Source: Entomortierella parvispora E1425 (taxonomy: Eukaryota; Fungi; Mortierellomycota). Taken from it: a DNA stretch of 64,000 nucleotides. The translations under genes and the position numbers were made by a program. Shown piece by piece: positions 27,818 to 58,420 of this stretch. The notes under the pieces were generated by a model. It had not been told where the DNA came from, did no database searches, and was given only the letters and a program-made list of their open reading frames with translations. The stretch is from positions 1,240,001-1,304,000 of the forward strand of contig BQFW01000012.1 in NCBI GenBank assembly GCA_020891255.1, read 5' to 3'. Position 1 is the first letter of the stretch. Every line of letters begins with the position of its first letter.

Positions 27818-29762
27818 ATGGCTTCGTCCGTCAACTCTGAGACGACGCAGCTCGACACTCCAGCAGTCCATGTGCCTGGAAAGACCGAGGTAGACCTGTA
27901 CAGGGGCGACTCGAGCTCGAATGCTTCCCAGATTGAAATGGAGACTTTGGATGTGGAACGACAAGGTGAACCCGAGCAACCCGCTATTGGGCCTCGTGCT
28001 GCCATCCTTCTCTTTGTCGGGTACGTTCTTTCAACTACAATATCAACTAGTCTCTCCCTCGCCCCCTTGTACGCCCCCCCACTACAGTTTTATTTTATTT
28101 TTTTCTTCCCGGGTGCTTGCGCCATGCCATACTCCCAGGCTCCCATTTCGCGCGTGCAACACCCTCTTTTCGGTCTCACATTCAAGGACCTCAGCAGCTG
28201 GACTTTGGAGAACTAACAGCATAGCTTCTTTTTTTCTCTCTCCTTTGCCTTGCCTTGCCTACCTTTATTTTTATTTTAGATTGGCCATGGCTACCTTCTT
28301 GGCCAGTTTGGATGGCACCATCATTGCCACCGCGCTTCCCAAGATTGCCTCGGAATTTAAGGCTCAATCCCAAATGTCCTGGGTAGCAACGGCTTACCTG
28401 TTGACCTACAATGCCTTCCAGCCCTTGTACGGAAAGTTCTCGGACATCTTTGGCCGCAAGGTCATGATTCTCTTTGCCGCCGTCACTTTTATGGCAGGAT
28501 CCGCCGGTGCCGGAGGCGCCAAGTCCATGACCATGTTGATCGCCTTCCGTGCCATCCAGGGTCTGGGCGGCTCGGGTCTCTTGTCGATCGTGTTGATCAT
28601 CATCTCGGACATCTTTCCGTTGGAGCAACGGCCCAAATACCAGTCCATCATCTGGAGTGTCTTTGGTGTCTCGTCCGTGGTCGGTCCTTTGCTCGGCGGT
28701 GTGTTTGTCCAGTCGGTGACCTGGCGCTGGTGCTTCTTGATCAACTTGCCCCTCGGTGTGGTCACGATTGTGTCCGTGCTCTTGTTCTTGCGCTTGCCCT
28801 TTGAGCGTCAAGACTTGAAGAAGCAATTGAAGCGTATCGATTACCTCGGTACGGGGTTGATCATCGCCGCCGTCATTTGCTTGCTCTTGCCCATCACCTG
28901 GGGCGGTACGACCTATGCCTGGAACTCGCCCGTGATCATCGTCCTGTTCTGTGCCGCCGCCGTCTTGATTGGCGTCTTGATGTGGGTCGAGTCCAGGGCG
29001 CACGAGCCCATCATCCCCCCAAGACTGTTCTTGAACAAGACGGTCTCGGTCCTCTTTGGTGTCAACTTCTTGACCGGCATGGGTTTCTTGGGTGTCATCT
29101 TTTACTCCCCCATTTACTTCCAGGTCGTCAAGGGCGTTGGTGCGACCGCTTCCGGTCTCCATCTCTTGCCCATGGTGTTGGGTCTCGTCCTCTCCTCGAT
29201 CGCGTCTGGAGCGGCCATGGCCAAGGTCCGTGATTACAGAATCTTTATCTGGCTCGGTACCACCATGATGTCGATCGGTGTCGGTCTTTGCATGCTGTTC
29301 AGCAAGGACTCGAGCATGGGTCAGCAGATTGGCTTCCTGTTGATTGTCGGTCTCGGTATCGGTTTGATTCTCCAGACCTGCATGTTGGCAGCCCAGGCGG
29401 CCGTCGAGAAGGAGGACATGGCGGTGGTCACGGCGCTGAGCGGTTTCATGAACTCTATCGGAGGTGGTGTTGGTATTGCCATGTGCTCTGCCTTGTTCAA
29501 CAACCACTTGACCACCAACCTGCAAAAGTTGCCCGCGGACGCCTTGCAGATCATTGCCGAGTACAACATTGCAGAGTCCATCACGGCCGTCCAGCAGTTG
29601 CCCGAACCCGTCAAGGGATTGGTCATTGATGCCTATGTCAACACGTTTCAGTTCATCTTCAAGTGCATCACCCCCATTTCTTGCTGCTCCTTCTTGTTGT
29701 CCTTGTTCATTCGCAAGTTGAGAATCTTGGATCCTTCCGAGGTTATCATGGCGGCTGGTTAA
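27818..29762 (+). CDS. MFS drug:H+ antiporter, DHA2 (14-TMS) family
   Basis: Intron 28021-28279. FLASLDGTIIATALPKI, WVATAYLLT..FQPLYGKFSDIFGRK, FRAIQGLGGSG, SWRW-like VTWRWCFLINLPLG, and multiple TM helices. Confidence 0.93.
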
Positions 29763-55059: not shown

Positions 55060-55137
55060 GACAGGACAGACAGGACAGACAGACAGACAGGACAGACAGA
55101 CAGACAGGACAGACAGACAGACAGACAGACAGACAGG
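55060..55137. repeat. (GACA)n / (GGACA) microsatellite between divergent genes
   Basis: Seen directly. Confidence 0.9.
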
Positions 55138-55326: not shown

Positions 55327-57111
55327 ATGCGTCGCGACAACAGCAACGGAACCTCAATCCACGTCAGTGGCTTCAAGGACAGCACGCGGTAAGGATTAGC
55401 CCTCATATGGCGTCCGAGTGGCCTGGCCAGGTCCTGCTCCTGGAAACAACCCACTAGCCTGACAAGCAACCTCGCTGACCTCTCCCACCTTCAGCCCTAG
55501 TGATCTTGCTGTTCTCTTTGAGCCTTATGGACGTATCGCCGATGGTATGTTTGCTTCAGGAGTCTATTATATGTTGTCCGCACGCCGACTCTTCTGTCGC
55601 TCCAACCAGTCACTCACCCATAACTGTTCTCTTTTGTTATGATCAGTCTACATCCCCAAAAACTACTACACGGGTGTCTCTCGAGGATTCGCTTATATCC
55701 AGTACGGTTTGTTGTGCTTTTTTTGTGATCAATACCCCCCTCATCTTCTCCAGTTTACCATCCTATCGGCGCGTCTGGACAGTTGACATTTGACCCACAG
55801 GATATGGACATTCAAATCTCAGCACTATCATGTCACAACCCAGCTGCTTGTCTCGCTGATACCTTATATCCTGTTCAACCACCCAACTTCAAAGACTTCA
55901 AGGAGGGAGCCCTGAGTAACATTGCTCCTCAAGTCAAGACAAGGACTGGACAAGAGCTGGGCAAGGGTTACACAAGTCAAGATGACCAACAGCGACACTG
56001 TGAAAAGCAATGGACACATCTAGGACCCAAGAACTGTGACAACCTCTGGGCAGAATATGACTGGCAGTTGGACCTAGTACAAGAACCTTCTTCCAAGCCT
56101 TCGGAGAACACGCACATCTTCAAGACCTGGATTACTCTTTTTCACTATGACATCAAGATTCAGACAAGATCCAACAAGGCTTCCTAACCAGTGGGACTCA
56201 AACCCGCGTCATGGTTTGTGTAAATTCCTTCTTTGAAATGTCTAAACAGGTACGAAAACGATGAAGATGCTCGCCGCGTCATGGAAGGTGGCGATCAATT
56301 TTCACTCGATGGCCGTCGCCTCACTTTGGAATATGCCCAAGGGCGAAGAAAGAGTAAGTCTGTTTTCTGGTTGTTTGGTTACATGGTAATCGGTCTCTGT
56401 GGTTATTCTCATCCTAACGATGCTCGTCTTTTCTTTCACCGTAGGCCCAAATCAAATGAGGCAGTAAGTTTCTTGTTCACACAGACTTTCAAGGTAACCT
56501 GGGTCGTCTTGGTGGTCATCTCACCTTGTCTTTCTTCTTGCATTCTAGCGGTGAACGTCGCGGAGGTGACCGAGGCCGTGGACGGTCTCGTTCCCGTTCT
56601 CGATCGCGTGATCGTCGCTACAGACGCAGGTAAGCACATTCGACTGGAATGATAAGAGATTCTCATCGCCACGACTGTAAACTTACAATGACCTACCTTT
56701 CTGATTAGCCCTCGCCGTTATTCGCGTTCTCGATCACCCTCTCGTGATCGTCGGGACCGCCGCGACCGTCGACGAGACAGTCGTAGCCCTGTGCGCCGTC
56801 GTTCGCGCTCCCCTACACCCTCGCGTTCCCGTAGCCCTTACAGACGTGAGAGCAGCCGCCGTTCTCCCTCTCCCCGAGAACGTGGATACCGCTCACCTTC
56901 TCCCAGACGCGGATCCTACCGCTCTCCTTCCCCCAAGCGTGGATCTTACCGCTCACCCTCTCCAAGGCGTCAAACATTCTCGCCCAGAGGATACAGCCCT
57001 CGTCAGCCGGCCATCAACCAAGAGCAGGGTGAATATCCACCAGCAGAAGTTGAGGGATATACACCACCTCGCCATATCAGTCCCGCTTCCTTCAACAATG
57101 ACGGATATTAG
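55327..57111 (+). CDS. SRSF10: SR splicing factor, SRSF10/SRSF12 (plant SCL)-like: RRM plus RS domain
   Basis: Spliced RRM: IHVSGFKDSTRPSDLAVLFEPYGRIADVYIPKNYYTGVSRGFAYIQYENDEDARR..LDGRRLTLEYAQGRRK.PNQMR. The PNQM signature and RS/SP repeats follow. Confidence 0.85.
55801..55915 (+). other. candidate poison (stop-containing) alternative exon in the long RRM intron 55702-56249
   Basis: TTGAC branch-like site and CCACAG acceptor ending at 55800. In-frame TGA at 55913-55915, immediately followed by a GTAACA donor. Confidence 0.55.
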
Positions 57112-58420
57112 TGTAGCATGCTGATCCGACATTCTCTGTTTTGAAGTACTTGCTTTCTTGCATCTGTTTCCCAATAAAAGGGCTAATCCATTATTCACCT
57201 GGATTTATCCGCGACGTCTCATTTCCATACCTTTGTTTTTACAAGAGTGTAGAGGAGGTGGACATACGTTGAATCAGGATTCTTGGACAGCTCCTCAACA
57301 AAGAACTTAGCCATGGTATCGTGAGCGTGATGTCTTTTGCAAGGCCATAGTTGTAGAGCTGTACATGGTTGTAGAGCAGTGCATGGTTGCCTGGCTCCTC
57401 GATGAAAGAAACCAAGATACCTTGCTGGTCGTTGTTAAACAAAAAACAGAAAGAAAAAAACAAAAAAAAAAACGGTTATAAATCACAAGGATGAGCCACT
57501 TGATGGTGTCCTCCTGCATGCATAGGCAAAAGATAACGACCCAAGGTACATGCTGCATCCTCTGGACTCCGGCACTTGGCGTGGCAGGCTAATTTATTCT
57601 TTTCTTTTTTTTTTGGGGGGGGGGGGAAAAAAAAATAAAGAGGCAGAGTAACTCTCAGAATGTGCGACCGCCCTTATCATAGCCCACAAGTGGACTAGAC
57701 AAGATCATCAATAAGCAACAAAGGACTCTTCCGAAGAAAAGAACTCTGAGCTTCGCTTCCCTCTATGGGCAGCGCACTTCAACTCATCGTCGAGAGTAAA
57801 CTGTGTGTCTAAGTTGGAAAACAAAGACTGGAGATGAACTAGACAGAAATCCTGTAAAGTACGATCATAAGGAGAAAAAAAGTTCCTGTTGCTCGGTCTC
57901 TTTTATAGTCCTTGTAGAGTGACTGTTGTGAGTGGAGTGCAAGCAGACAGGGCTTTGCAAAAATGAGAATCTGAGGTTCAATTGAATCGGCGCAAACAGA
58001 TCAAAAATTGATTTTAGTGGGCAGACGATTTCGTTTTACGCTGAAAGAAAACTTGAGCACAGAGCCATCGGACGTGCCCTCCTTGCAAAAGCAAGCAAAG
58101 GCGCAAGAGACCATGAAGAAAACATCCGACGTTGCAGTTTTCCACCTCTCTCAATTGCAAGAGAAGGGTCTTGCACTCGTTCACACTTGTGTTCATTTCT
58201 GCACACCCACCTGCCACCTGCCCGCCCCACTGCACTGAACCAGCACAGAAAAGAGAAAATCAAAACAGAGCAGCAGTCACTCTTTTTTTTTTTTTTTTTA
58301 CGCTCCTCTTGCCTGGCTGGCTCTCTGACAAAGCAGCCTCGGCCTAGAAAGTGCGCCAGGGCCTGCAGTCGAATTGTTCCTCCTCTTTCATTCTCAGTTC
58401 CATCTTTCAGCGTACTTGCC

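What the first reader, a model, noticed from the sequence alone, without database searches (positions are those of the whole stretch)
55702..56249. Candidate poison exon in the SRSF10-like gene at an intron position matching animals and plants
Seen: the intron after GFAYIQ (phase 2, CA|G) is 548 nt, several times longer than the other introns of the gene. It contains an internal acceptor (55800), and inclusion gives an in-frame TGA at 55913-55915 directly followed by GTAACA. The following sequence is dense in ACAAG/TCAAGAC/GGAC motifs. Known (from memory): vertebrate SRSF10 has an autoregulatory poison exon in the intron after GFAYVQ (a minor-class intron), plant SCL genes have unproductive splicing in a long RRM intron, and SRSF10 prefers purine-rich ACAAAGAC-like sites. 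Inference: ancient AS-NMD autoregulation preserved in an early-diverging fungus, with a U2-type donor (GTACGG) here.
Basis: partly seen in the sequence, partly recalled or inferred. Interest (0 to 1): 0.7.

Follow-up and report, generated by a model that had tools for sequence, protein, structure and literature searches.

The report
Ancient CAAG-repeat splicing switch in SR gene

Summary
The gene at 55327-57111 (+) is Entomortierella parvispora EMPS_08793, an SRSF10/12/SCL-like protein with one RRM and an RS tail. Its third intron (55702-56249) is 548 nt, against 79-106 nt for the other five. The intron core is the densest CAAG region in the whole 64-kb window: 15 CAAG versus 3.4 in shuffles, and 1 on the opposite strand.

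The same intron is 474-1023 nt long and CAAG-rich in all 11 fungal loci fetched. These are ten Mortierellaceae loci (two paralog clades) and the chytrid-grade fungus Gonapodya. Ten non-redundant introns hold 154 sense CAAG against 32 antisense. About 45 animal loci have a U12-type intron (CA|ATATCCTT) at the identical codon position, and about 22 of them carry 18-24 CAAG per 300 nt.

Its donor GT is absent in the two closest orthologs. The conserved internal signal is a branch-like CTGAT with a pyrimidine tract ending at AG 55893-94 or 55901-02, directly before the cluster, and every non-productive outcome meets an early stop.

My reading is a fungal, U2-type variant of the SRSF10 autoregulatory module. 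The plant comparison was not tested.

The parts
55327..57111 (+). SR-protein gene with 7 exons and 257 codons. It encodes one RRM and an RS tail and equals EMPS_08793 (P0041).
   Evidence: Splice sites were read. Frame and length were checked. Each exon translated on its own is found in P0041.
55647..55701 (+). Exon 3. It ends ...RGFAYI + CA, which is phase 2 inside the Gln codon of RNP-1.
55702..56249 (+). Long intron 3 (548 nt), the feature under study.
   Evidence: It is single-copy in the genome.
55702..55711 (+). 5' splice site GTACGGTTTG. It is U2-type and off-consensus. The 10-mer is identical in 7 of 11 fungal loci, GTACGGTTTA in L008, GTACG-type in L003 and Gonapodya, and GTATGT in L010.
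55784..55786 (+). First in-frame stop (TGA) if the intron is simply retained.
   Evidence: The ORF 55709-55786 lies in the retention frame.
55801..55915 (+). It is present in the sequence, but its splice sites are not conserved.
   Evidence: The donor GT at 55916 is AT in L004 and is not conserved in L096.
55854..55902 (+). Conserved internal 3' splice-site signal. It has a branch-like CTGAT (55856-55860) and an AG-free pyrimidine tract, with the first AGs at 55893-94 and 55901-02.
   Evidence: The block CGCTGATA.C.T.T.TCCTGTTCAACC and TTCAAGGA are conserved with L004. The AG-free run is 49 nt, and the AG lies 4 nt before the cluster. An analogous tract plus AG occurs in 7 of 8 Mortierellaceae introns, and the same is seen by eye in a ninth, L096.
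55913..55919 (+). Premature stops. TGA 55913-15 is in frame for acceptors 55800 and 55902. TAA 55917-19 is in frame for acceptor 55894.
   Evidence: Read directly and translated.
55899..56178 (+). Cluster of 15 sense-strand CAAG motifs (8 of them CAAGA), plus TGGAC motifs, in a T-poor segment.
56181..56211 (+). Conserved block TTCCTAACCAGTGGGAC.CA..CCCGCGTC holding the distal branch point CTAAC (56183-87) at the 3' edge of the cluster.
   Evidence: CCTAAC lies next to the last CAAG in most lineages.
56192..56249 (+). AG-free zone (56 nt) followed by the productive 3' splice site AG at 56248-49.
   Evidence: The other fungal loci have AG-free zones of 19-115 nt.
56250..56353 (+). Exon 4, the second half of the RRM (YENDEDARRV...YAQGRRK).

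Best explanation
Intron 3 of this SRSF10/12/SCL-like SR gene is most likely an autoregulatory unproductive-splicing module. Productive mRNA needs the off-consensus donor at 55702 to pair with the distal branch point (CTAAC, 56183) and the AG at 56249, across 548 nt. Between them lies a 280-nt platform of sense-strand CAAG(A) repeats, probably bound by the gene's own product and by its paralog EMPS_04182. When the protein is abundant, binding diverts splicing to an unproductive outcome. The most likely route is activation of the conserved internal 3' splice site directly upstream of the cluster (AG 55894 or 55902), which would leave 55895-56249 in the mRNA. An alternative route is masking of the distal branch point at the cluster's 3' edge, which would cause retention. 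Every such isoform meets a stop within 8-28 codons (TGA 55784, TGA 55913, TAA 55917), upstream of three further introns. It should therefore yield no functional protein and is a plausible NMD target. Shown here: the anatomy, the statistics, and conservation across paralogs, genera, phyla and animals. Inferred: who binds the cluster, the direction of the effect, which internal site is used, and NMD. My rough odds: conserved RNA-level cis-regulatory element 0.9; negative feedback by unproductive splicing 0.6-0.65; the internal 3' splice site at 55894/55902 as the route 0.4.
For: 1. The intron is long in all 11 fungal loci fetched (474-1023 nt), while its neighbours are about 80-110 nt. It persists in L004, where the upstream introns were lost.
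2. CAAG is 3-5 times enriched in each intron, and no more than 2 of 500 shuffles reach the observed count. Pooled over eight Mortierellaceae introns it is 126 against 32.5 expected, z = 16. Over ten non-redundant fungal introns it is 154 sense against 32 antisense. It is absent from the other introns and is the densest spot in the window.
3. Gonapodya, from a different phylum, has a GTACGC donor, a 474-nt intron and 16 CAAG against 3.5 expected.
4. About 45 animal loci have a U12 donor at the identical codon position. About 22 of them have 18-24 CAAG per 300 nt, sense strand only, starting right after a pyrimidine tract plus AG.
5. A fish srsf10 locus has an AAAG/NAAG cluster in the matching place. 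In mammals the exon 3 enhancer there is the experimentally shown SRSF10 autoregulatory element (PMC7244321). The reported SRSF10 site AAAGACAAA (PMC8522700) shares AAGACAA with the fungal CAAGACAAG runs.
6. The internal branch-like motif, pyrimidine tract and AG are conserved directly before the cluster.
7. CTAAC plus a long AG-free zone is conserved at the cluster's 3' edge.
8. UPF1, UPF2 and Mago nashi are encoded in the genome.
Against: No conserved internal 5' splice site was found, so a true cassette poison exon is not demonstrated. Binding of this RRM to CAAG is inferred only by analogy. The vertebrate cluster is AAAG-rich rather than CAAG-rich. One animal subgroup shows no cluster within the 3 kb held. 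The repeats could instead help removal of a long intron, which would be a positive or neutral role. Gonapodya and L005 lack a clear internal pyrimidine tract plus AG before the cluster.
Confidence: 0.6

Rival explanations
1. One reading: a 115-nt cassette poison exon, 55801-55915, spliced in through AG 55800 and out through GTAACA at 55916. The CAAG cluster would then act as a downstream intronic enhancer.
For: Both sites exist and the TGA is in frame. The AG at 55800 aligns with an AG in L004. Donors without G at +5 do occur in the paralog's ordinary introns, for example GTACAG and GTATAT, so GTAACA is not impossible.
Against: The donor GT is AT in L004 and is not conserved in L096. The region upstream of 55800 is not a conserved pyrimidine tract. 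In animals the cluster lies inside the regulated exon, directly after its 3' splice site, not downstream of a cassette.
Confidence: 0.12
2. The CAAG cluster is a splicing enhancer needed for efficient removal of an unusually long intron in a fungus that normally defines short introns. On this view it is constitutive or positive, and no regulated unproductive isoform exists.
For: SR-bound enhancers can promote use of nearby splice sites. The cluster abuts the distal branch point. No RNA evidence for a poison isoform was obtained.
Against: This does not explain why the intron stays long in every lineage, even where neighbouring introns were lost. It does not explain why an internal 3' splice-site signal is conserved before the cluster. 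In mammals the element at the same place drives the non-coding isoform (PMC7244321).
Confidence: 0.15
3. The cluster is a platform for a different RNA-binding protein, or for RNA modification at RGAC sites, so the regulation is not autoregulation.
For: The binding partner is untested. TGGAC is a second enriched motif, 23 against 6.6 expected. AAGAC and GGAC fit a DRACH-like pattern (my inference).
Against: Only 28 of 126 CAAG sites continue as AAGAC. The cluster co-occurs with this one gene family across fungi and animals, which fits self-recognition. SRSF10 is shown to act on its own exon 3.
Confidence: 0.1
4. This is a non-functional long intron: repeat expansion, a decayed insertion, or a hidden coding exon or non-coding RNA.
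For: A 134-codon ORF (55783-56187) and a 152-codon stop-free run lie in the intron. M. verticillata has a tandem (CAAGA)n stretch.
Against: The sequence is single-copy in the genome. The ORF has no Pfam hit. The stop-free frames differ between lineages, and the indels against L004 are not multiples of three. CAAG repeats carry no stop in any frame, which explains the long ORFs. There is no Rfam hit in the intron. Conservation across phyla rules out drift.
Confidence: 0.03

Closest known systems
Mammalian Srsf10 autoregulation through exon 3 and the competing minor and major 5' splice sites (Meinke et al. 2020, eLife, PMC7244321)
   Same: The gene family is the same: 43% identity over the RRM to an animal SRSF10-like protein, E = 4e-23. 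The intron position is the same, phase 2 after GFAY[IV]Q. A pyrimidine tract plus AG inside the intron is followed at once by a roughly 300-nt purine-rich NAAG repeat cluster. Inclusion gives an early stop.
   Different: The fungal donor is U2-type GTACGG and has no U12 competitor. No conserved downstream 5' splice site or AATAAA lies inside the intron. The cluster runs straight into the branch point of the productive 3' splice site. The core motif is CAAG, as in many invertebrates, rather than the vertebrate AAAG. Function is untested here.
Plant SCL33 and SCL30a autoregulation through a long RRM intron (Thomas et al. 2012, as cited in PMC4598772; Kalyna et al. 2006, PMC1636356)
   Same: Both involve a single-RRM SC35-like SR protein. 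Several database entries name the fungal orthologs SCL30a or scl25a. Both have a long, alternatively spliced intron inside the RRM that gives truncated products, and the protein binds repeated GAAG motifs in that intron.
   Different: Identity of the intron position between plants and this gene was not verified here. The plant motif is GAAG, not CAAG.
Fungal srp2/SRSF5 unproductive intron retention (Lareau and Brenner 2015, PMC4379411)
   Same: A fungal SR gene keeps an unusually long intron at a position shared with animals, and the retained intron carries stops and is NMD-sensitive in Neurospora.
   Different: It is a different SR subfamily and a different intron. That intron's sequence is reported as not notably conserved, whereas here a specific repeat motif is shared between fungi and animals.

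Membership tests
SRSF10/SRSF12/SCL-type single-RRM SR proteins | One N-terminal RRM followed by an Arg/Ser-rich tail | tested here: met
   Pfam RRM_1 is precomputed for P0041 and its orthologs. The RS-rich C-terminal half is visible in the sequence. The nearest solved RRMs are SRSF2 and SRp46.
SRSF10/SRSF12/SCL-type single-RRM SR proteins | Closest relatives outside the family Mortierellaceae are SRSF10/12, sharing RGFAY[IV]Q and ...AQGxRK at the end of the RRM | tested here: met
   The profile of the N-terminal 57 residues finds Gonapodya first and then cnidarian, mollusc, hemichordate and vertebrate SRSF10/12. BLASTP gives 43% identity, E = 4e-23. No phylogenetic tree was built.
SRSF10/SRSF12/SCL-type single-RRM SR proteins | Phase-2 intron inside the Gln codon after GFAY[IV]Q | tested here: met
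   Seen in the window, in all fungal loci, and in about 45 animal loci plus read-through models ending ...QYPF.
SRSF10-type autoregulatory unproductive splicing module | Competing U12-type and U2-type 5' splice sites | tested here: not met
   The only donor is GTACGGTTTG, with no [AG]TATCC. A U12 snRNA search of the genome found nothing, but that search had no valid control.
SRSF10-type autoregulatory unproductive splicing module | Internal 3' splice site followed by a repeat enhancer cluster inside the intron | tested here: met
   Met at the sequence level only. CTGAT, a pyrimidine tract and AG at 55894/55902 are followed by 15 CAAG, and the arrangement is conserved.
SRSF10-type autoregulatory unproductive splicing module | An unproductive isoform exists in RNA and responds to the protein's level | not testable with these tools
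No truncated transcript-derived ORFs from Mortierellaceae appeared.
SRSF10-type autoregulatory unproductive splicing module | The protein binds the cluster | not testable with these tools
   There is only an analogy to the reported SRSF10 sites AAAGACAAA and AGAGAV.
U12-type (minor) intron | 5' splice site [AG]TATCCTT and branch site TCCTTAAC 10-20 nt from the 3' splice site | tested here: not met
   The donor is GTACGG. CCTAAC lies 62 nt from the AG.
Plant SCL long-intron autoregulation | Same intron position, and GAAG repeats bound by the protein | not tested
   No plant locus could be reached, because the word search needs shared 5-mers. Only literature statements were read.

The most novel reading that the evidence does not exclude
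The NAAG-repeat platform in the intron after GFAY[IV]Q is a single regulatory module inherited from the common ancestor of fungi and animals. It may be older still if the plant SCL33 GAAG repeats are the same thing. It would have survived more than a billion years, a switch between U12-type and U2-type splicing, gene duplications, and the loss of neighbouring introns. That would make it one of the oldest known cis-regulatory RNA elements and a direct readout of the RNA specificity of the SRSF10/SCL RRM.
Probability: 0.45. Interest if true: 0.8.

Novelty: new variant of a known kind. Interest (0 to 1): 0.68.

Why it matters
Autoregulation of SR proteins by unproductive splicing is well known, but most events are thought to have arisen independently in each gene and lineage. 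Here a specific motif cluster, at a specific intron position, is shared by Mortierellaceae, a chytrid-grade fungus and many animals. This points to inheritance rather than reinvention, and the element works with either spliceosome type. It offers a compact 548-nt, genetically tractable fungal version of the SRSF10 switch. It gives a testable prediction for the RNA motif of the fungal RRM, namely CAAG(A). It also explains why public gene models of this family are so often split or truncated at this intron.

Tried and rejected
I did not resend or trim the query, so read laying could not be used.

The search for related loci with the 34-residue exon 4 was too short. A stop-free read-through reference meant to widen the length window held a stop.

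Pfam on single exons gave nothing useful because the pieces are short.

A search for truncated transcript-derived ORFs from Mortierellaceae found only genome-annotation fragments. One Logan locus (P0053) returned no DNA.

The intron as a repeat or transposon: it is single-copy. The intron as coding sequence or non-coding RNA: rejected.

A second CAAGA-dense spot at 28.5-29.2 kb on the minus strand is the antisense of an MFS-type coding ORF and is unrelated.

The U12 snRNA search was uninformative.

A literature search for CAAG together with SRSF10 returned one unrelated paper.

Spliced model: I sent no joined exon model to any search tool. Exons were searched by reference one at a time, and the database protein P0041 was used for full-length work. 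In one search a script joined the exons only to count length and stops.

No human sequence was fetched. A fish locus stood in for vertebrates.

Full report
**Observation.** The gene on the + strand at 55327-57111 has seven exons: 55327-55388, 55495-55544, 55647-55701, 56250-56353, 56445-56463, 56549-56629 and 56709-57111. The frame closes at 257 codons. Each exon translated on its own is found in the database protein P0041, 'EMPS_08793 [Entomortierella parvispora]'. The introns measure 106, 102, 548, 91, 85 and 79 nt. The AG at 55799-800, the in-frame TGA at 55913-15 and the following GTAACA are all present.

**Motif density.** The interior of the intron is unlike the gene's other introns. T falls to 14-16% between 55900 and 56050, against 36-44% in three of the short introns. 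It holds 15 CAAG, against 3.4 in dinucleotide shuffles (maximum 10 of 500), with only 1 CTTG on the opposite strand. Every 300-nt window with 11 or more CAAG in the whole 64-kb window, on either strand, lies in this intron. The other five introns hold 0-1 CAAG each.

**What could not be done.** I did not resend or trim the query, so no reads could be laid on the window. Everything below is comparative. I sent no joined exon model to any search tool; exons went in one by one by reference, and the identical database protein P0041 served for full-length work. In one search a script joined the exons only to count length and stops.

**Relatives in fungi.** The intron is single-copy in the genome. 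The genome has a paralog on another contig (L003, EMPS_04182, P0023). It has the same exon structure and a 794-nt intron at the same place. A search with the 34-residue exon 4, followed by look-ups of the encoding contigs, gave nine more Mortierellaceae loci, named in the protein hit list as Podila, Linnemannia, Dissophora, Benniella and Mortierella spp. In every one the intron after GFAY[IV]Q is long: 502, 580, 703, 704, 706, 788, 1017 and 1023 nt. Seven of the eleven fungal loci, counting the window and Gonapodya below, begin with the identical GTACGGTTTG, and L008 has GTACGGTTTA.

**Statistics in fungi.** Pooled over eight non-redundant Mortierellaceae introns:
- CAAG occurs 126 times against 32.5 expected (z = 16).
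- CAAGA occurs 65 times against 11.6 expected, with 6 on the opposite strand.
- TGGAC occurs 23 times against 6.6 expected.

Across ten non-redundant fungal introns there are 154 sense CAAG and 32 antisense. The flanking DNA in the same loci has about 4-8 CAAG per kb, against 16-34 per kb in the intron. In L004 the upstream introns have been lost, since residues 1-56 are contiguous, yet the 580-nt intron is kept.

**A distant fungus.** Gonapodya prolifera is a chytrid-grade fungus. Its ortholog (P0052, L014) has the donor CA|GTACGC and a 474-nt intron with 16 CAAG, against 3.5 in shuffles (maximum 8 of 300; 10 of 500), and 2 on the opposite strand.

**Relatives in animals.** A profile of the N-terminal 57 residues found many short SRSF10/12 models from cnidarians, molluscs, a hemichordate, fishes and a salamander. 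All read ...RGFAY[IV]Q-YPF/L, which is a read-through of a U12-type donor. A scan of metagenome contigs with the same profile gave 80 loci, mostly host animal DNA. About 45 distinct loci have CA|ATATCCTT, and one has GTATCC, at the identical codon position.

About 22 of these loci carry 18-24 CAAG in a 300-nt window, sense strand only, 150-1700 nt downstream of the donor. The maximum on the opposite strand anywhere in these loci is 7 or fewer. In the loci I printed, the cluster begins directly after a pyrimidine tract and AG. In L033 it ends at an ATATCCT. That matches the published mouse arrangement, in which exon 3 contains an enhancer and an unused minor 5' splice site (PMC7244321).

A named fish srsf10 locus (L095) has the U12 donor and a pyrimidine tract plus AG about 158 nt into the intron. 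A roughly 300-nt cluster follows, but its repeat is AAAG/NAAG rather than CAAG. One animal subgroup, with ATATCCTTGAAACTCAG|GTAGCA, shows no cluster within the 3 kb held.

The shared unit across these groups is therefore NAAG(A): CAAG in fungi and many invertebrates, and AAAG in the fish. The reported SRSF10 site AAAGACAAA (PMC8522700) shares AAGACAA with fungal runs such as CAAGACAAG. M. verticillata has a tandem CAAGA run.

**Anatomy inside the window's intron.** Alignment with the closest orthologs, L004 and L096, shows three conserved islands in otherwise diverged sequence:
- The donor GTACGGTTTG.
- A block at 55854-55882 with a branch-like CTGAT and an AG-free pyrimidine tract. Its first AGs are at 55893-94 and 55901-02, four nucleotides before the first CAAG of the cluster.
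- A block at 56181-56211 holding CTAAC at the 3' edge of the cluster. A 56-nt AG-free zone follows, up to the productive AG at 56248-49.

An analogous internal pyrimidine tract plus AG sits within -4 to +51 nt of the start of the densest cluster in 7 of 8 Mortierellaceae introns, and the same arrangement is seen by eye in a ninth, L096. It is not clear in L005 or Gonapodya. CCTAAC lies next to the last CAAG, followed by a long AG-free zone, in most lineages.

The GT at 55916 is AT in L004 and differs in L096. I found no conserved internal 5' splice site in the window's clade. Donors without G at +5 do occur in the paralog's ordinary introns, so a weak internal donor cannot be ruled out from sequence alone.

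**Consequences for the reading frame.**
- Retention of the intron meets TGA at 55784-86.
- Use of AG 55800 or AG 55902 meets TGA at 55913-15.
- Use of AG 55894 meets TAA at 55917-19.

All these stops lie upstream of three more introns. UPF1, UPF2 and Mago nashi are encoded in the genome, so NMD is feasible.

**Rejected alternatives.** The 134-codon ORF in the intron has no Pfam match. The stop-free frames differ among lineages, and the indels against L004 are not multiples of three. CAAG repeats contain no stop in any frame, which explains the long open stretches. No Rfam family matches the intron.

**Interpretation.** The best-supported reading is a fungal, U2-type variant of the SRSF10 autoregulatory module. 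A CAAG-repeat platform between an internal 3' splice-site signal and the distal branch point would be bound by the SR protein or proteins, and binding would divert splicing from the productive 55701^56250 join to an isoform with a premature stop.

- I put about 0.9 on the cluster being a conserved RNA-level regulatory element.
- I put about 0.6 on negative feedback through unproductive splicing.
- I put about 0.4 on the internal acceptor at 55894/55902 being the route. Branch-point masking with retention is the main alternative.

**Comparison with what is known.** The module matches mammalian Srsf10 autoregulation in gene family, intron position, internal acceptor, repeat cluster and premature stop. 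It fails the defining feature of competing minor and major donors, so I file it as a variant rather than a member. For plant SCL genes the literature read here confirms a long, alternatively spliced RRM intron and GAAG repeats bound by SCL33. I could not verify that the position is the same.

The precedent for cross-kingdom unproductive splicing of an SR gene is SRSF5/srp2 (PMC4379411). There the intron sequence itself is reported as not conserved, whereas here a motif cluster is shared. Searches of the paper library found no report of this fungal module or of a CAAG cluster in SRSF10/12 genes. That library does not cover subscription journals.

**Verdict.** The general idea of an ancient autoregulatory intron is strongly supported by comparative evidence, but remains unproven at the RNA level.

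Noticed in passing
window 57650-57868 (-); L003 about 2610-2830: A U3 snoRNA gene (Rfam RF00012, 90 bits) lies just downstream of the SR gene. An identical copy lies downstream of the paralog on contig C6, so the SR gene and U3 appear to have been duplicated together.
   Followed up: partly
L014 4960-5030 (Gonapodya prolifera): The long intron ends in ...cgtttAG immediately followed by GTAAGT. A 63-nt intron then runs to the real exon 4. These abutting 3' and 5' splice sites form a zero-length exon, as at a recursive-splicing site.
   Followed up: no
L004 3001-3168: In this Mortierellaceae genome the first 56 codons are contiguous, so introns 1 and 2 have been lost, yet the 580-nt CAAG-rich intron is retained.
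   Followed up: partly
P0002, P0003, P0005, P0011, P0014, P0017, P0045, P0047-P0049, P0056 (public models): Public gene models of this family are often split or truncated at the long intron, or start inside it. Several skip the 19-nt exon 5, which gives frameshifted Ala/Val/Leu-rich tails instead of the RS domain.
   Followed up: partly
L028 1-1307: This metagenome-collection contig looks like cDNA, with residues 8-57 contiguous. It continues through the U12 donor into a cluster of 24 CAAG. It may be a transcript that retains this intron in an unidentified eukaryote.
   Followed up: no
window 27921-29762 (+): A 613-codon ORF, apparently an MFS-type transporter by its look (not searched), explains the TCTTG-dense stretch at 28.5-29.2 kb. 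It is unrelated to the SR-gene cluster.
   Followed up: partly
window 55060-55135: A (GACA)n microsatellite lies about 200 nt upstream of the SR gene's start codon.
   Followed up: no
same genome, other pieces (findings s1-201191, s1-176457): First-stage notes list candidate poison exons in long introns of another SR gene (at the SWQ|DLKD position) and of a FUBP/PSI-like KH protein in this genome. They would be worth testing with the same comparative approach.
   Followed up: no
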